Part shown: positions 10,494 to 27,911 of the stretch, piece after piece
Layout: the number at the start of each line of letters is the position of its first letter
Position numbering within the stretch: position 1 is the first letter of the stretch
Source: Bigelowiella natans CCMP2755
Lineage: Eukaryota; Protista; Cercozoa
NCBI GenBank assembly: GCA_000320545.1
Contig: ADNK01003423.1
Span: 1 to 37,192, forward strand
DNA: 37,192 nt
Direction of reading: 5' to 3'
Position numbers and translations under genes: made by a program
The notes under the pieces: model-generated
Told to the model about the DNA's origin: nothing
The model's input: only the letters and a program-made list of their open reading frames with translations
Database searches by the model: none

Positions 10494-11797
10494 CATCGTC
10501 ACCGTCATCGTCATCAACATCATCATCATTATCATCATCATCATCATCGACATTACCCTCCTCCTCCCCATCAATTCCCCCCTGTCTTCAGGAACCTGGT
10601 CAGGCCCTGGGTGGGAACCTCGATATAGCACCTTAACCCAGGTAGTAGTAGTACATCGTGATGTTGCTGGTTGGTGGTGATGATGATGATGATGATGACG
10701 ATGATGATGATGATTATCACGATTGAAATGGAAGCAGCATGCAGCAGACAATCCTTTCCGTGTGGGTTTTGAATTAATGCTGTGGAAATCAATGCGAATT
10801 ACATTGATTTCGTAGAGACGCATACGTGTATTTATTGGTCTCTGTTGCTGCTTTTTCCTCTATTTTTCCTCCATCCAGTCTTTGCTTTTTCCTGTTAACC
10901 CGACGAATGTGTATTGAGGATGTACGCGCACACACGATGATGAGTATGATGATGAGGATGATGATGATGATGTTAAAACACAGGTGCTGCTTTCGATCCA
11001 AGCTATGATTCTTGGAGTTGAAGAGCCAATTGCCAATGAACCAGGGTCACCATGATTATAATGCCTCAAAACACCTTTCGCAACAATGAGCTGCAAACTT
11101 TCTCTGCGTATTCTAACGAATAAGGAGAGCGAGCAATCAAAAGATTGCGTGTTATTAATGAATGGTGATCAATATATACACATTATTTAGGTGGGAATAT
11201 GAAGTCGGCTCGAAACGCTCAAAGAATTATAACGGTTGTTGATTTTTGTTGCTACATCCATCCATTCATCATCGGCTACATTCATCCATTCATCATCGCC
11301 TCTAGGAGGGAGACGAGCAAGATTCAATAACACTTCCCCTCTGTCTCCCCTCCCTCCTCTGTATGACTGATGAGTTCCTTCCTTGAACAAGGCATACTTC
11401 AATGGGGCACGATGAAGTGGGCTATGCTGCACTATCTACAGAATGGGGCTCCTCAAGGGTCGTTGTTCTTGTTGTTGTTTGTTGTTGTTGTTGTTGTTGT
11501 TCATGATGTTTTTTGGGTGTTGCTGTGAAGCTGACTCTCCTTTACCTAATGTGTGATACATACACACAAACAGAGAGGGGGGGGGATTAGAAATATGATA
11601 GCTAAACGCTGCTAATAATGTCGCAGATTTGATGACATTGTGAAGGCTCATTTCTGGAATAAGCGAGAGTAATACGATTACTACTACTTCACTACTACTA
11701 CTACTACTACTACTAGCTAGCTAGCTACTGCTACTGCTTTATTGACAAATGCACAGCATGTATCATTGATGCGTTTAGAAAGCGCCATATTATAAAC

Positions 11798-13036: not shown

Positions 13037-13868
13037 TGTGAATCTAGGATGACTTCTGAACTATCATCTGGCACGCATGGAGCTCACAAATGTGGCGCTT
13101 ATAGAGGTCATGAATGTGGACATGGACGAGATCTCTCGATAGACATGGAACAACATCTCGCAATACGCCTTGTTCTACCCATAAGCAATAGTAATTTTTG
13201 GGCGTTTGGGGATCCTATCCCGTCGAACACGCTACTAGCTGATGATTCATCTAGTCAATTGAGTCATCGTTGTCTAGTTGCACATGCGGTTGAATTTTGT
13301 GTCATTCACAATAAGCATGGTTCTGAAATGATTTTCATTATTTGTGACCATGCTGCCCACCACACAAGCTAGCAAGATTGAACTTGTCAATCATGATGAC
13401 ACGCGCATGTTGCAATGATCCAACGCATGCGCCAGATGAGTTGATGATTGGATCCAGAGATGAACACACATCGATTCAACGTCCACTTCTTGGAAAGTTG
13501 TGTGCACGAGGACATTGTTTGCAAGTGGAATCAAATTGTGTTTTGCACCACCGGCCCGAGCCGAGCGTGCATGCGCAGCGCTTTTGCATGCCGCCAGCAT
13601 CGCATGACGCTACGCCGCTTTCTAGCTTTGTGCGCCGGACAACTCCAGAACTCTCCAAGGATGCCACAAGATGATCTAGATGTGTCCAACAAGTGCAAAC
13701 TTTCGCTCAGCTCAATCGTTTTTGCTGCCCTGCTGCTGATGTGCATCTGAACACATCACAGGCTCTCTGGCTAGCTAGCTTCAGAGCTGTGATCGACAGG
13801 TGTGACACTCCACGGTGGCTGGCTGGCTTGTTTGGAGCTGTGGTGCAATGCCAGAAGAATGCTCCACG

Positions 13869-13960
13869 GTGATGTGAATGTGAATGTGAACAAAGCGTTG
13901 ATGCAAAACCACATGAGCAAGAACCACATGGGAGACATGCCAGCATGCACAAACACGTCG
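13869..13960 (-). mobile_element. Short remnant of a second, related LINE 3' end
   Basis: (GTGAAT)n followed by AACAAAGCGTTGAT...AAAACCACATGAGCAAGAACCACATGGGAGACA aligns with 14045-14093 (AACAAAGCGTTGAT...AAAACTGCATGCGCCAGAACCACATGGGAGACA). Confidence 0.6.
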
Positions 13961-14004
13961 CAGCGCCTCAACAAAAATCATTGCGAGGAAGCTAGCTGGA
14001 CAAC

Positions 14005-15810
14005 GAACAATGAACAATGAACAATGAATGAACAATGAACAATGAACAAAGCGTTGATCAAAAACTGCATGCGCCAGAACCACATGGGAGACAGGCATTT
14101 GCACGCAGCAGAGCCTCAACAACACTCGTTGCAAGGACTTGTCAGCACCCTGTTGGTGAAGAGACACAAAAAATCAGCTGCAACCCATCAGAGGCACACT
14201 CCAAGGCTGCGTGAAGGGATGAGAACACCATGGCCACTCATCTGAAATGCCGGAGACGGAACAAGGGATGAAATTGGCATGGATGCCGATTGATGGTGCC
14301 GTTGCAATGTGAATTGATTGGAACTGAAGCTGGCATCTTGGATGCCGAACAGCAGCAAAATTGTCAAGCAGGACAATGGTTCGACGGAAAGCCCTGTCGA
14401 TTTCTTTGTCAGTCGAAGGGACACCAGGTGTGGCCCCCAAAGCAAGGCAGAACTTGTCATGAGAAGACATGGCTGAGAAAGCACGCAACGTGCGACAACA
14501 TCATCATTGGCATCAGGTTGATGACGAGACACCAGGTGACGAATCCTGGTCCAAAAACGGTCTCTGATGTCGCACGTTCCTTGACAGGAGAACAAAAGGT
14601 GTTTCAGGGACACGTCTTCGTGAGGTTCGCACAAGGAGCACCAGCCCTCATGCTGCTCCAGTGCGAAGAATCTGGCAGTGTTGTGACGCCACCACAAGGC
14701 TCCACAACGAGCTTGGAATTTGAGGGACACACCACGGGCATCGTGCCATTCATCGAGGCACTTGGAGCAATGAAGATGGGCCTGTTTGCCCACTTCCCCA
14801 TGGCTCCAAGATTGCGACTTGGAAATCGGCTCCCATGAGCGAACCAAAAGACACCGAAGAGATTGCATTCTGCTCACCTGGGCACGCACCAAACGAGCAT
14901 CGCGAGAGGCAATTGAAGAGGCTTGAGAGTTCCATGCCGCAGCTCATTCCGTCATGGAATTGGAAGCCAGGAGGCTGGGAGGAGCACTTTGGAGAACCGA
15001 AAGGATCAGACGCTTGATGGAGCGAGCAGGAAGCAAGTCAAGTTGGAAGCAAGAACCCCACAAGGAACTGCAAAGACGCTCTGTGAAAGATGCACTCTTC
15101 AGGAAGAACCGCATTGTCAGAGTTTGGAGCCTTGAGGCCATTGATGGAAGACCCAATTCCAGTCGAATGGCCACAGCTGGAATGCGCACAGGCGCACGCA
15201 ATGCCCAGCGCATGGCTTCACTTTGAACCCCTTCAAGGAGGCGGAGCGAATGGGCCGGCAATGAAGGACTCCACACAGCTGCCGCACGCTCCACGAGCGG
15301 CCGCACCGTGGCCTTGTGAACGGTGATGAAAGCTCTGGGAGAGAGTTTTTCTCCGGCAGTTGAGCACATTCTTTTCATCGTGAAGAGGGCTCGACGGGCT
15401 TTGCGGGCATTGGAAGCAGCCTGTTCTTTCCAATCCAGAGAAGAATTGAAGATGACTCCCAAGCACGTGTGAGAGTCGGTCCTTTTTGGCCAGTGACCAT
15501 TGCAGCAGAACCTCAGCAATGACGTTCGACTGCGGTGAGGTGGTTGTGCACCGACGCACATCCACATCGTTTTTGGAGAAGGATTTGGTTTCAAACGCCA
15601 TTTTCTGAGGCAAGCATCCACCACCTGCAAAAGAATGCGGGTCTCAGCCGCCGAAGAGGCGAGTGGCACCATGTCATCAGCAAACAACAGAATGGCAACT
15701 CTCCCGAATGAAGTGGGCACCCCCAGATCCCGCCGACGTGACTCTGGGACCAAATCTTCCACAAACACACTGAAACACAAAGGCGATTCCACTGCCCCTT
15801 GAGGCAGTCC
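14005..15810 (-). mobile_element. 5'-truncated non-LTR (LINE) retrotransposon, hypermutated
   Basis: The RT frame begins abruptly at 15810 with GLPQGAVESPLCF, followed by LLFADD, HTCLGVIF (YxYLG-type), HKATVRPLVERAAAVWSP and a C-terminal zinc knuckle CSLC-x8-H-x4-C. A short tandem tail, (AACAATG)n on the + strand, lies at 14005-14047. Confidence 0.9.
14188..15810 (-). pseudogene. LINE ORF2 fragment (C-terminal RT, thumb, CCHC zinc knuckle) with one in-frame TGA
   Basis: ORFs 14944..15792 and 14188..14892 are in the same frame, separated by a single TGA at 14944-14946. Neither ORF contains a Tyr. The endonuclease and N-terminal RT are missing. Confidence 0.85.
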
Positions 15811-15828
15811 AACAAAGCGTTGATCAAA
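15811..15828. repeat. 18-bp direct repeat of 14045-14062 at the LINE 5' junction (TSD-like)
   Basis: AACAAAGCGTTGATCAAA is identical at 14045-14062 and 15811-15828; a 14-bp variant occurs at 13889-13902. Confidence 0.85.
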
Positions 15829-16372
15829 CAGCTGGCTGCTGCTGCCAATGCCCGTGCAACTTCATGATGCTGGCATTAGACGCTGTGAGTTTGTTCAATA
15901 ACAGGAGATCCTATGCCTGCGACAATGGTATTTCATTGTCGCAGTATCATAATAACAACAATAGTAGTGTGGTACTAACAGAGATCATGGGATCAAGAAA
16001 ATGTGTAAGGAGAGGAGGAGGAGGAGGAGGAGGAGGAGGAGGTGTAGAGATCTAGAGGATAACGAGGATGCCCGTGCGGTTCTATCACCATAAATCAGTG
16101 CGCGTGGTTATAGCCGCCTACTGAATGTAAGGAGCAAGGACTGGAAGGAGGACCTCGACAGACAGACAATAAGAATTGTAAGAAAATTTCAGACCAGATC
16201 AGAAGCACCGCCATTCGTGCTACTCGTACCAGTGACGACGACGATGACGACGACTGGTTGTATCAAGGGACTGCATGCTGTTGTCACCTACCTATACCTC
16301 TCATGTCATAGTATCATCGTGCGGAGAGGCTTTTACCATGCGGCCAAAATAAGTAGAAGACTAAATAATGGC

Positions 16373-25635: not shown

Positions 25636-27911
25636 TCATGACCGATTTGATTTATTTGAATTATATCCCTTGGCGACAAGGCTGAGTTTGCCTGTTCTCA
25701 CCAACAATTCCAGGCAGCGAGGTAAGCTCGTTTTCAATAGAGATGGGTTTGAGCGCGCATCAACGTGCAGCAATTCTTCCAATCTCGCAAGCTGTGGAGG
25801 CAACGATTGCAAGTGATTCCGACTGACATTGATCTTTCTGAGCTTGGTTGAGTCTACAAATAGTGTCTCAGGCAATGACACAAGCTTGTTACCATCGACC
25901 GATAAATCGCGCAGATATTGCATGGACTTTCCCAAGTTATCTGGAATGGTTTTGATCTCATTGTTTGATGCGTAGAGTCGCTCAACTTCTCCTTCACTGA
26001 AAACGGGCATTTTTTTTAGAGAATTACAGCGCAGGTCAACGCGATCAAGGCCTTTCATCTCCTCGACGCTGCTTGGGAGTGAAGTCAATGCATTTTGCCA
26101 CACATTAAATGACTTCAGCCGCGAAAGCTGCCCGATAGAATCCGGTAATGATATAAGTTGATTCTTGAACAGTGTCAGCCTTTCAATCTGTCGCAATGAG
26201 CCTATGGAATCAGGTAATGATGTTATCTTATTGCATCTCACATCAAGAGCTGTCAATCCAGAGAGCCGTGTTATGGACTCTGGAAGAGTCTTTAATCGAT
26301 TTTGCGACAGCAAGAGCGTACGAAGATGCTGCTTAAGCTCCCCTATTTCTGAAGGCAAGGGAGAGATCAACAAATTGGCGGAGAGATCTAGAATCTGTAG
26401 CTTGCTTAGATTTGAGATCGCACACGGCAACTTAGTGATTTTATTCATGGATGCATAGAGCTTTTCTAACGACCGCAGCTGACAAATCACTTCCATTGCA
26501 TCAACTGCTGTATTAGAAGGTCCAGTGACTTCTCTCTCTCTCTCTCCCCCCCCCCCCCCTCCTCCTCCTCCTCCTCCTCCTCCTCCTCCTCCTCCTATAG
26601 ACGGCAATGCTCTTGTCGTCATCATGACTGTGGATGATGATTCTAAATGGTTCTTGCTCACAGATAGCCACCTTAGTTTTTCAAGATTTTGCAATGTAAC
26701 AGGCAGATATTTTAAGTTGTTGCAGCTAAGATTTAGAATCTGAAGTTGTTTGAGTTCCCCCAGGCTATCAGGAAGGGAGGAGAGGTCGTTTGTGCTTAGA
26801 TTCAAGCTGGTGAGACTGTACAATCGGCTTATTTTAGGAGAAACAGTGACAAGACGGTTGTGGTTGATTTCGAGGCTCTCCAGTTTCAGCAGATCAAACA
26901 GCTGAGACGGCAGAGCACTTCCAGAGGGATGATGATGCTGCTGCTGCTGATGATGATGATGATGGCGAGAAGGGGAGGCGGTCAAGATGGAGGGGAAATT
27001 GGAGGGGGGTGACGACGACGACGACGACGAGGATGATGATGATGATGAAAACGGTGATAAAGGAGCATTGTTATTCATGCTGCCAAGTGCGAGCACCTTG
27101 AGAGATTGTCGCAACCCTCCGAAGTCTTGTGGCAAAGACACAAGATTTGAGCGCCAACAACACAGAACACTGAGTTTGGGGAGAAAGCAAAGGCCGTCTG
27201 GCAGCGAGACAAGGGGGTTATTTCTCAAAGCAAGTTCCCTTAGGTCATTGAGTTGGCCGATCTCATCTGGAAGGGACTTCAGCTTGTTGTCGCTTAAAAG
27301 TAGCCGTCTTAAGGTAGATAACTGCCCAATCTGCTTTGGAACTCTCTCGAGGTTATTACGCTCGAAATTCAAGACTCTAAGTTGCTTGAAGGCCAAGATT
27401 CCTAGTGGCATTGAAGTTCTAGGCTCACCCCAAGAAAAATCCAAAGTTGTCCTCCTTTCAGTCACAATTTGCCACACCTTCCTTACGAGTGACCGTGCGC
27501 TTTGCATCGCTGTGCCTGCAAATTTGTCTTCGTCGTCGTCGTCGTCATCGTCGTCGTTGTCCATGATAAAGTCGCGATCTTCCTCGCCATCATTTCTCAC
27601 TATCTTCTTCTCTTGCCTCTGCTGGAAGATAAGGATATTTTGGCCTTTATTCTCTCCCCTCCTATCCCCCCCCCTCCTCCTCTTTACAAGAATAGAGGAC
27701 ACACACGCTTCCAAGCCGACAGAATTGGAAGCATGGGAACCATCGACGGGGCTATCGTTCCACGGAGCAGTATAGGTATTGAATCTTGCTAAAGCACCAA
27801 GAGCTTTCATCGTCTGCATCGCTGTGGTAGACGATATACCCCCTGATCTCTTTAACCTCTGTAGTATTTTCAGTGATGAAACTAGGGACGGAACAACACG
27901 TTCCCTCCAGA

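What the first reader, a model, noticed from the sequence alone, without database searches (positions are those of the whole stretch)
13995..15877. A retrotransposon with every TpA erased: candidate repeat-targeted A:T->G:C hypermutation ('reverse RIP')
Seen: reading line by line, I found no TA dinucleotide between the TA at 13993-13994 and the TA at 15877-15878 (~1.88 kb). On the order of 100 would be expected from base composition (rough estimate), and the host genes and introns are full of TA. CpG is abundant in the element, so CpG decay does not explain it. The ~540-codon ORF2 remnant has no Tyr. Established LINE RT motifs show the expected substitutions: YxYLG reads H(CAC)-T-C(TGC)-LG; YKxxVRPxLEY reads H(CAC)KATVRPLVE-R(CGT); DDIVLLA-type reads DD-M(ATG)-V-P(CCA)-LA. 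Both T->C and A->G appear on the same strand, which implies action on both strands. Established contrast: fungal RIP is C->T and creates TpA; ADAR editing of an RNA intermediate gives only A->G on the sense strand. Inference: a genome-defence pathway that deaminates, or modifies and miscopies, the A of TpA in repeated DNA. I know no named pathway for this but cannot verify novelty.
Basis: partly seen in the sequence, partly recalled or inferred. Interest (0 to 1): 0.92.

Follow-up and report, generated by a model that had tools for sequence, protein, structure and literature searches.

The report
TA-erased LINE in Bigelowiella natans
A broken jumping gene in the alga Bigelowiella natans has had every TA turned into TG or CA; this is the footprint of a TA-specific DNA hypermutation that a 2026 preprint already showed by experiment in this alga, so it is real and striking but not new.

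Summary
**Observation:** confirmed. Window 13995-15877 has 0 TA where about 100 are expected, and TG and CA are raised by about the same number.

**What it is:** a 5'-truncated non-LTR retrotransposon (LINE) on the minus strand. It lies inside a 2.5-kb TA-poor island between ordinary host genes.

**Evidence for mutation:**
- Natural TA-bearing relatives from ocean metagenomes have 40 TA sites across two parts of the element. In the window these read TG (18), CA (19), CG (2) or a deletion (1).
- Tyr in the relatives is Cys or His here.
- The change is TpA-specific: 0.46 per A at TpA against 0.10-0.13 in other contexts. It hits both strands equally and shows no 3'-neighbour preference.

**What is known:** this matches the TpA→TpG/CpA hypermutation shown by mutation accumulation in B. 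natans (bioRxiv 10.64898/2026.01.13.699255). That work also flagged TpA-depleted reverse-transcriptase genes. This scan had already met the same thing on other DNA of this genome (s1-417271, s1-417380).

**Added here:**
- Most of the erasure was inherited from an already-erased source copy that kept making copies. Only a few sites changed at this locus.
- TA loss spreads about 50-600 bp into host flanks.
- The process cannot create stop codons.
- CTAG is the one TA context that persists in erased islands, partly as later 8-bp insertion scars.

The enzyme and the trigger remain unknown.

The parts
13370..15877 (.). The whole TA-depleted island (about 2.5 kb). It has no TA from 13995 to 15876 and only 7 TA from 13370 to 13994.
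14000..15810 (-). 5'-truncated copy of a non-LTR retrotransposon (LINE). It holds the C-terminal half of the reverse transcriptase, a Cys/His-rich C-terminal region, the 3' UTR and a microsatellite tail.
   Evidence: RVT_1 match. More than 30 genomic copies at 76-99% identity have different 5' ends and a common 3' end. The 5' end of homology to other copies and to the TA-bearing relative L041 is at 15810.
14944..15792 (-). Reverse-transcriptase remnant ORF (282 codons, no Tyr). It ends at an in-frame TGA at 14944-14946, where sister transcripts have Trp.
14188..14892 (-). C-terminal ORF piece in the same frame (234 codons, no Tyr). Tyr in the Tara Oceans relative P0014 is Cys here, or His in the case of AHLYC versus AHLHC; other copies have His, Cys or Arg at these positions.
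14000..14049 (-). Heptamer microsatellite tail at the 3' end of the LINE.
   Evidence: period 7, 7.6 copies
15811..15876 (.). 66 bp of flank beyond the LINE 5' junction that is also TA-free, showing spread of the process into neighbouring DNA.
   Evidence: The same gradient is seen in 19 other loci.
13887..13989 (-). Second, partial copy of the LINE 3'-end unit (about 100 bp, a widely repeated unit), just downstream of the main copy.
   Evidence: matches at many loci and to window 14043-14137
13370..13886 (.). TA-poor stretch of uncertain origin. Part of it (13488-13791) is 75% identical to one other locus, which is only mildly TA-poor. It is either an older erased fragment or a hypermutated flank.
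13365..13376 (.). 8-bp insertion scar of the type N4-CTAG-N4 (CAAG CTAG CAAG) at the edge of the island.
13618..13629 (.). Second N4-CTAG-N4 scar (CTTT CTAG CTTT) inside the TA-poor zone.

Best explanation
The stretch is a dead, 5'-truncated LINE retrotransposon of the alga Bigelowiella natans. It carries the saturated footprint of this alga's TpA-specific hypermutation: on chromosomal DNA, the A of 5'-TA-3' on either strand is read as G, so each TA becomes TG or CA. Shown: the signature, its TpA specificity, its strand symmetry and its spread into flanks. Inferred: the chemistry, most likely adenine deamination to hypoxanthine by a TadA/ADAT2-like or other zinc deaminase, and the targeting, probably a silenced-chromatin or RNA-guided domain rather than sequence repetition. 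For this copy, most of the roughly 100 TA losses happened earlier, in the source element it was copied from. That source had already been erased and still gave rise to many 5'-truncated copies. Only a handful of sites (about four identified), plus the adjoining flank, changed after insertion here. Because TA-to-TG/CA cannot create an in-frame stop codon, the element keeps long Tyr-free open frames that gene predictors call as genes.
For:: 0 TA against 100 expected, with matching TG and CA excess.
the TA-bearing relative L041 (TA O/E 0.67; its protein has 8 Tyr). All 11 of its TA sites in the 281-bp overlap are TG (7) or CA (4) in the window.
the Tara Oceans relatives L065 and L066 (TA O/E 0.88 and 0.81). 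The 29 TA sites of L065 in window 14346-14949 read CA 15, TG 11, CG 2 and a deletion 1.
A-to-G per A is 0.456 at TpA (the ceiling is 0.5) against 0.10-0.13 in other contexts. The 3' neighbour has no effect (0.48-0.54).
51 alignment columns are split CA versus TG. Sites q1141, q1575, q1665 and q1834 hold mixtures of TA, CA and TG across copies of both subfamilies.
the youngest sister copies (L021, L024) differ from the window only at TA sites. Against L002 there are only 7 CA/TG discordances where about 47 would be expected if erasure had been independent, so most erasure is shared by descent.
there is a third-codon-position excess between subfamilies (p about 1e-5).
in 19 clean loci TA O/E is 0.22 in the first 50 bp of host flank, with TG and CA at 1.35-1.39, rising to baseline by about 600 bp.
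independent transcriptome and metagenome sequences show the same Tyr-free, TA-free state.
the preprint's mutation-accumulation lines show de novo TpA-to-TpG/CpA changes in this species and TpA-depleted CDS enriched in RT domains.
Against: De novo mutation in LINEs has not been observed directly: the preprint's hypermutating regions were two viral insertions, and only some lines mutated. The TA-bearing relatives come from metagenomes of unknown organisms and are 12-16% diverged, so they are proxies and not the true ancestor. Some ancestral TA sites are now CG (q1272, q1287, q1401), which needs a second step outside TpA. The enzyme is unidentified. The genome has one A_deamin locus and about six CDA-fold loci, and none stands out.
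Confidence: 0.85

Rival explanations
1. The lesion is on the T, not the A. A thymine-modifying activity at TpA (for example oxidation to a hydroxymethyl-uracil-type base, or glycosylase-driven error-prone repair) is miscopied as C. Because TA is its own reverse complement, this gives exactly the same TG/CA pattern.
For: The pattern is strand-symmetric, so sequence alone cannot tell A-to-G from T-to-C. No adenine DNA deaminase has been identified.
Against: Adenine deamination has a natural precedent for a 5'-U/T context: tRNA A34 follows U33 in the TadA/ADAT2 substrate (established knowledge). The preprint found an ADAT2-like protein with the residues linked to DNA editing. No T-modifying enzyme was tested here.
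Confidence: 0.15
2. RNA-level editing: ADAR-like A-to-I hyperediting of LINE transcripts (or of the cDNA) before integration, so that copies are born edited.
For: Most of the erasure in this copy was inherited from its source. The family is transcribed (MMETSP transcripts). ADARs prefer a 5' U.
Against: Editing of sense RNA gives only TG on the sense strand, yet TG and CA are equal. Specificity is near-absolute for TpA, not graded as for ADAR. Host flanks that were never part of the LINE RNA are TA-depleted. Sister copies differ at TA sites after insertion. The preprint sees the process on chromosomal viral DNA. Only one A_deamin locus exists in the genome.
Confidence: 0.05
3. Inherited compositional bias without mutation: the family was always TA-free through selection against TA or UA, for example to avoid a TA-cutting nuclease or TA-targeting transposons.
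For: All 30+ copies in the genome are TA-free, and no TA-bearing copy exists in the assembly.
Against: TA-bearing relatives exist at 84-88% DNA identity (one of them in a protein cluster at 90% or more), with Tyr at the positions that are His or Cys here. Different copies resolved the same site to CA or TG. Flanking host DNA is depleted too.
Confidence: 0.02
4. Assembly, base-calling or polishing artefact.
For: None found. Raw reads could not be inspected.
Against: The same Tyr-free, TA-free sequences occur in MMETSP transcriptomes, a JGI sample contig (L064) and ENA metagenome contigs. Dozens of copies on different contigs share the state. The preprint resequenced the strain with Illumina against this reference.
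Confidence: 0.01

Closest known systems
TpA hypermutation of integrated viral and foreign DNA in Bigelowiella natans (Mettrop et al., bioRxiv 2026, 10.64898/2026.01.13.699255)
   Same: Same organism and same signature: only TpA is hit, the outcomes are TpG and CpA, TpA is depleted and CpA+TpG is enriched. The preprint also lists TpA-depleted CDS enriched in reverse-transcriptase and endonuclease-RT domains and 124 depleted clusters genome-wide.
   Different: The preprint measured de novo mutation in two viral insertions and treated transposons only through Pfam enrichment. The sections read here (Results, Discussion) hold no family-level analysis. The present locus is a saturated LINE. Added here: comparison with TA-bearing relatives, shared versus independent erasure, spread into flanks, no 3'-neighbour preference, and persistence of CTAG.
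Repeat-induced point mutation (RIP) of fungi
   Same: A DNA-level, dinucleotide-specific transition hypermutation of mobile elements. It acts on both strands, saturates its targets and leaks into flanks.
   Different: The direction is opposite. RIP is C-to-T, mainly at CpA, and creates TpA and stop codons. Here TpA is destroyed and no stop can be created. RIP needs duplicated sequence and a premeiotic stage. Here a single-copy viral region mutates in vegetative lines (preprint), so repeat sensing is not shown.
ADAR A-to-I hyperediting of repeat-derived double-stranded RNA
   Same: A read as G, a preference for a 5' U, and repeats or foreign sequences as targets.
   Different: ADAR acts on RNA and marks one strand only. 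Its neighbour preference is graded. It does not alter flanking chromosomal DNA. All three points were tested and not met here.
APOBEC3 / AID cytosine-deaminase hypermutation of retroviruses and retroelements
   Same: A mutational defence against retroelements with a dinucleotide context. Edited copies can persist in the genome.
   Different: It is C-to-U on single-stranded cDNA, giving G-to-A on the plus strand only. It makes stop codons (TGG to TAG/TGA) and raises AT content rather than GC content.
TadA/ADAT2 tRNA adenosine deaminases and the adenine base editors evolved from TadA
   Same: They deaminate an A that follows U/T (U33-A34 of the anticodon loop). Evolved TadA acts on DNA and gives A:T to G:C. 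The preprint proposes the B. natans ADAT2 homologue as a candidate.
   Different: Natural enzymes act on tRNA. No B. natans enzyme has been shown to act on DNA. The six CDA-fold loci found here were not resolved further.

Membership tests
B. natans TpA-to-TpG/CpA hypermutation footprint (Mettrop et al. 2026) | Changes fall on TpA only | tested here: met
   A-to-G per A is 0.456 at TpA against 0.115 (CpA), 0.128 (ApA) and 0.102 (GpA), measured against the TA-bearing relative L041. 11 of 11 and 28 of 29 TA sites of the relatives are changed to CA, TG or CG in the window.
B. natans TpA-to-TpG/CpA hypermutation footprint (Mettrop et al. 2026) | Both outcomes, TpG and CpA, occur (both strands are hit) | tested here: met
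   Window: TG 18 and CA 19 at the 40 anchored sites. Across copies: TG 103 and CA 91.
B. natans TpA-to-TpG/CpA hypermutation footprint (Mettrop et al. 2026) | [quoted passage not shown] | tested here: met
   From: TA O/E is 0.00 and (CA+TG) O/E is 357/233 = 1.53 over 1.88 kb. A 2.5-kb island is about two and a half 1-kb windows, so it may fall just under the preprint's cluster rule of three windows.
B. natans TpA-to-TpG/CpA hypermutation footprint (Mettrop et al. 2026) | The sequence is from B. natans and of foreign or mobile origin | tested here: met
   Proteins in the same clusters at 90% identity or more are JGI Bigna1 models of Bigelowiella natans. The genome is 91.4 Mb against 94.7 Mb published. 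There is an RVT_1 domain.
B. natans TpA-to-TpG/CpA hypermutation footprint (Mettrop et al. 2026) | Elevated de novo mutation rate at TpA in present-day lines | not testable with these tools
Indirect support: the youngest copies differ only at TA sites.
Fungal RIP | C-to-T transitions (CpA to TpA) that enrich TpA | tested here: not met
   The direction is opposite: TpA is 0 and CpA and TpG are enriched.
Fungal RIP | Triggered by sequence duplication | not testable with these tools
   The family is repeated, but the preprint's main target is single-copy. The trigger is unknown.
ADAR-type RNA hyperediting fixed by retrotransposition | A-to-G on the sense strand only | tested here: not met
   The TG and CA excesses are equal.
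ADAR-type RNA hyperediting fixed by retrotransposition | Confined to the transcribed and retrotransposed sequence | tested here: not met
   Host flanks are TA-depleted in a gradient. In the window, 66 bp beyond the junction are TA-free.
Non-LTR retrotransposon (LINE) | Reverse-transcriptase domain | tested here: met
   RVT_1 scores 24.5 bits in the window, below the 29.6 cut-off; only the C-terminal part of the domain is present and it is erased. It scores 106 bits in the TA-bearing relative P0005.
Non-LTR retrotransposon (LINE) | Copies with variable 5' truncation, a common 3' end and a 3' microsatellite tail | tested here: met
   Query starts range from 90 to 1652 with ends at about 1874. 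There is a heptamer tail. The flanks are unrelated to one another.
Non-LTR retrotransposon (LINE) | Endonuclease domain (APE or restriction-like) and clade assignment | tested here: inconclusive
   No endonuclease family was found in the pieces tested. The VRPxLE...VWSP...LEGVQ motif resembles CR1/L2/Jockey-type elements, from memory only.

The most novel reading that the evidence does not exclude
The erased LINE lineage is not just a relic. After losing every TA, and with it every Tyr codon, the source kept producing new 5'-truncated copies. The TA-free state may therefore be an escape by target loss from the alga's mutational defence, with retrotransposition carried out either by a Tyr-free reverse transcriptase or in trans. 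Linked to this, CTAG may be a protected context, for example a modified base that blocks the mutator.
Probability: 0.15. Interest if true: 0.75.

Novelty: already known. Interest (0 to 1): 0.45.

Why it matters
TpA-directed A:T-to-G:C hypermutation mirrors fungal RIP in reverse and is a rare case of a eukaryote mutating foreign DNA in its own chromosomes at adenine or thymine. The discovery belongs to the 2026 preprint.

This locus extends the picture from two viral insertions to an ordinary LINE family and gives testable detail:
- The process works on chromosomal DNA.
- It spreads a few hundred bases into host sequence, a possible cost to neighbouring genes.
- It shows no neighbour preference beyond TpA.
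- It disables by missense only and never by stop codons. This explains the Tyr-free "genes" in the annotation.

The LINE copies also provide many natural replicates, with TA sites still segregating, for measuring the rate and finding the trigger and the enzyme.

Tried and rejected
- **Raw reads:** The artefact question was answered indirectly from independent transcriptome and metagenome sequences.
- **More relatives:** The search for related loci in metagenome contigs and genome contigs found no relatives. The TA-bearing relatives came instead from the protein search and the cluster look-up.
- **Context deciding the outcome:** I tested whether local context decides which strand is hit, which would mimic shared ancestry. 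It does not: the 3' neighbour gives 0.48-0.54.
- **A 5' C as protection:** I tested whether a C before the TA protects the A. This is rejected for CTAH sites, where the A on that strand is hit as often as the A on the other strand. CTAG itself is still retained more often than other TA.
- **Second TA-poor stretch:** 26835-27219 is a run of trinucleotide repeats that looks coding, not a clear hypermutation island.
- **Selection on the erased source:** a codon-position test within the window's subfamily cannot show whether the erased source was under selection, because differences between copies after insertion are neutral in any case.
- **Deaminase survey:** one A_deamin locus and six CDA-fold loci were found, with no outstanding candidate.
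- **Bacterial-type scan:** the promoter and terminator scan is uninformative for a eukaryote.
Full report
**1.
- In the 37,192-base window the longest stretch without TA runs from 13993 to 15877 (1,884 bases). The next longest is 241 bases.
- Between 13995 and 15877, TA is 0 against 100.4 expected from composition. TG is 160 against 97 expected and CA is 197 against 136. CpG is ordinary at O/E 0.66, against 0.73 for the window.
- The surplus of TG and CA (about 124) is about the size of the TA deficit.
- A sliding profile shows that the TA-poor state starts at about 13370, so the island is about 2.5 kb.

**2. What the sequence is.**
- It lies on the minus strand and encodes the C-terminal half of a reverse transcriptase (RVT_1), followed in the same frame by a Cys/His-rich region. 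Together these are 541 codons with no Tyr and two stops.
- A search of the window's own genome (91.4 Mb, 3,736 contigs) found at least 94 matching stretches. These include more than 30 copies at 76-99% identity with different 5' starts and a common 3' end.
- The flanks are unrelated to each other, and there is a heptamer microsatellite tail at 14000-14049.
- This is the anatomy of a 5'-truncated non-LTR retrotransposon. The window's copy spans about 14000-15810.
- Downstream lie a second ~100-base fragment of the same 3' end (13887-13989) and a low-copy TA-poor stretch.
- The neighbours are ordinary host genes: a ubiquitin-conjugating-enzyme exon near 10 kb and a PPR protein near 20-21 kb.

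**3. Organism and prior knowledge.**
- Earlier notes of this scan name the genome as Bigelowiella natans.
- I checked this. Proteins in the same clusters at 90% identity or more as the family's transcripts are JGI Bigna1 models of B. natans.
- A literature search found one directly relevant paper: Mettrop et al., bioRxiv 10.64898/2026.01.13.699255.
  - In a mutation-accumulation experiment with B. natans, two integrated viral regions mutated about 1,000 times faster than the rest of the genome.
  - 230 of the 231 changes were A-to-G or T-to-C, all on TpA, giving TpG or CpA.
  - The authors also found 324 TpA-depleted predicted genes enriched in reverse-transcriptase, endonuclease-RT and DDE domains, and 124 TpA-depleted clusters genome-wide.
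  - They proposed an ADAT2-like adenosine deaminase as the enzyme.
Two earlier follow-ups of this scan reached the same conclusion on other DNA of this genome (s1-417271, s1-417380).

**4. Direct proof at this locus.**
- A 2.7-kb contig filed under a Bacteroidota metagenome bin (L041) carries the same family with normal TA content (O/E 0.67). Its protein has 8 Tyr and a strong RVT_1 match of 106 bits.
  - In the 281 bases that overlap the window (15530-15810, 88% identity), all 11 of its TA sites are TG (7) or CA (4) in the window.
  - These include TAC to TGC (Tyr to Cys in "DAYLRRW" versus "DACLRKW") and CTA to CCA (Leu to Pro in "DDMVLLA" versus "DDMVPLA").
- Two ocean-metagenome contigs, one of them from Tara Oceans (L065, L066), have TA O/E 0.88 and 0.81 and cover window 14346-14949 at 84% identity.
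  - The 29 TA sites of L065 read CA 15, TG 11, CG 2 and one deletion in the window.
  - At the protein level their Tyr residues are Cys in the window, or His in one case, and His, Cys or Arg in other copies.
- Over 2.6 kb of the element compared with seven B. natans copies, A-to-G per A is 0.456 at TpA. The ceiling is 0.5, since one hit destroys the site. In other contexts it is 0.10-0.13.
- TG and CA outcomes are about equal, and the 3' neighbour makes no difference.

**5. Inherited or acquired here?** All copies in the genome are TA-free and no TA-bearing copy is in the assembly. The answer is mixed.
- *Evidence for independent change:*
  - 51 alignment columns are split between CA and TG. 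The analogous double differences in other dinucleotide classes number 2-26, and the larger of those (GT/AC) are what TATA runs would give.
  - Four sites (q1141, q1575, q1665, q1834) hold TA in some copies, CA in others and TG in others, across both subfamilies.
  - The youngest sister copies (L021, L024; 0.2-0.5% divergent) differ from the window only at such TA sites.
- *Evidence for inheritance:*
  - The window and L002 disagree (CA versus TG) at only 7 sites, where about 47 would be expected had they been erased independently.
  - At the 11 anchored sites, three copies agree at 8, against 2.75 expected (p about 0.001).
  - Since context does not decide the outcome, this sharing is by descent.
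- *Deeply diverged copies:* L007, L012 and L027 resolved roughly half or more of their sites independently. Divergence between subfamilies is concentrated at third codon positions (for example 42/35/81, p about 9e-6). The subfamilies therefore separated while still functional, and each was erased afterwards.
- *Conclusion:* erasure and amplification were interleaved. This copy inherited most of its TA losses from an erased source that was still being copied, and it acquired only a few in place.

**6. The process acts on chromosomal DNA.**
- In 19 loci with clean, unrelated flanks, TA O/E is 0.22 in the first 50 bases outside the 5' junction, with TG and CA at 1.35-1.39.
- TA O/E is about 0.5 out to 200 bases, about 0.65 out to 600 bases, and then at baseline (about 0.78).
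- The first TA lies a median of 56 bases out, against 13 for random positions.
- In the window the 66 bases beyond the junction (15811-15876) are TA-free.
- Together with the equal TG and CA outcomes, this excludes editing of the sense RNA as the main route.

**7. A consequence not stressed before.**
- TA-to-TG/CA cannot make an in-frame stop: TAA becomes TGA or CAA, and TAG becomes TGG or CAG.
- The element has no TAA or TAG in any frame, and its two stops must be TGA.
- At the first stop, a sister transcript has Trp.
- Damage is therefore by missense only: every Tyr is lost, and some Leu, Ile and Val codons change.
- Long open frames survive, which explains annotated gene models such as a 749-residue Bigna1 protein without a single Tyr.

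**8. Not an artefact.**
- The same Tyr-free sequences occur in MMETSP transcripts, in a contig of a separate JGI sample that carries a TA-erased copy next to TA-rich sequence (L064), and in ENA metagenome contigs.

**9. Mechanism: what is shown and what is inferred.**
- *Shown:* the TpA specificity, action on both strands, action on chromosomal DNA with local spread, and continued activity after insertion.
- *Inferred:*
  - Deamination of adenine to hypoxanthine. A TadA/ADAT2-type enzyme is attractive because its natural substrate A34 follows U33 (established knowledge).
  - Targeting by a silenced-chromatin or RNA-guided domain.
- *Open points:*
  - A T-directed lesion cannot be excluded from sequence, because TA is its own reverse complement.
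  - The genome has one ADAR/ADAT1-type locus and about six CDA-fold loci, none singled out.
  - 'Repeat-targeted' is not established, since the preprint's main target is single-copy.

**10. Side observation on CTAG.**
- In the window's TA-poor zone, 6 of the 7 surviving TAs are in CTAG, against 3.4% window-wide.
- Across about 38 loci, 104 of 204 TAs in erased surroundings are in CTAG, against 119 of 2,689 elsewhere (odds ratio 22, p about 5e-70).
- There are two causes.
  - Some are clean 8-base insertions of the form N4-CTAG-N4 inside LINE copies, so they post-date the LINE. They make up 36% of island CTAGs against 13% elsewhere. They match the 'CTAG scars' other follow-ups described in this genome.
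  - The only two TAs of L041 that survive in any B. natans copy are both in CTAG: 2 of 8 CTAG observations, and only a few retained among some 230 TA observations in all. This hints that CTAG is erased more slowly.
- CTAG density in islands is only mildly reduced (1.8 against 2.5 per kb), while other TAs fall more than 20-fold.

**11. A step left out.** Natural TA-bearing relatives and column tallies answered the question without it.

**12. Verdict.** The phenomenon is already described for this very organism, and this scan has met it before. The locus is a clean, saturated example in a LINE, with some new detail on its history, its spread into flanks and the persistence of CTAG.

Noticed in passing
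window 13370-13995; loci L001-L040: CTAG is the TA context that survives in TA-erased islands. It accounts for 6 of 7 TAs in the window's zone and 104 of 204 across loci, against 4.4% elsewhere (odds ratio 22). CTAG density is only mildly reduced in islands, while other TAs fall more than 20-fold.
   Followed up: partly
L012 (q1486), L018 (q1806), L022 (q1356); window 13365-13376 and 13618-13629; also window CTAGs at 11717, 24910, 25284, 25449, 25600 and 33710: There are 8-bp insertions of the form N4-CTAG-N4 with the N4 duplicated, inside LINE copies and absent from sister copies. These are footprints of an unidentified element with a 4-bp target duplication. They are about twice as dense in erased islands (0.64 against 0.34 per kb).
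   Followed up: partly
window about 14629, 14614 and 14500 (q1272, q1287, q1401): Some ancestral TA sites are now CG in many copies. That needs a second change at TpG or CpA, outside the TpA rule. Private T-to-C changes are about twice as frequent at TpG as at TpT or TpC, but the direction of change is uncertain because of CpG decay.
   Followed up: partly
L041 (GCA_039817665.1, contig JBCBVK010000623.1): A contig filed under a Bacteroidota metagenome bin carries a eukaryotic LINE 88% identical to the B. natans family, so it is probably a mis-binned algal contig. TA-bearing (P0014) and Tyr-free (P0015, P0016) variants in the same cluster at 90% identity or more are all ENA records; at least P0014 comes from ocean metagenomes.
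   Followed up: partly
window 26835-27219: This is a second TA-poor stretch (3 TA against 21 expected). It consists of GAT/GAC/CTG trinucleotide runs and looks like low-complexity coding sequence, not a hypermutation island.
   Followed up: partly
genome-wide (literature, PMC13746701): AC:GT dinucleotide microsatellites are reported to be very common in B. natans and another rhizarian. Conversion of (TA)n into (TG)n/(CA)n by TpA hypermutation could contribute to this. The idea is speculative and was not tested.
   Followed up: no
P0011 (Bigna1 model 82453, 749 aa) and P0013 (Bigna1 model 77451): Annotated B. natans gene models of this LINE family have no Tyr at all and raised His and Cys (about 4-5% each). 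They are erased transposon remnants called as genes.
   Followed up: partly
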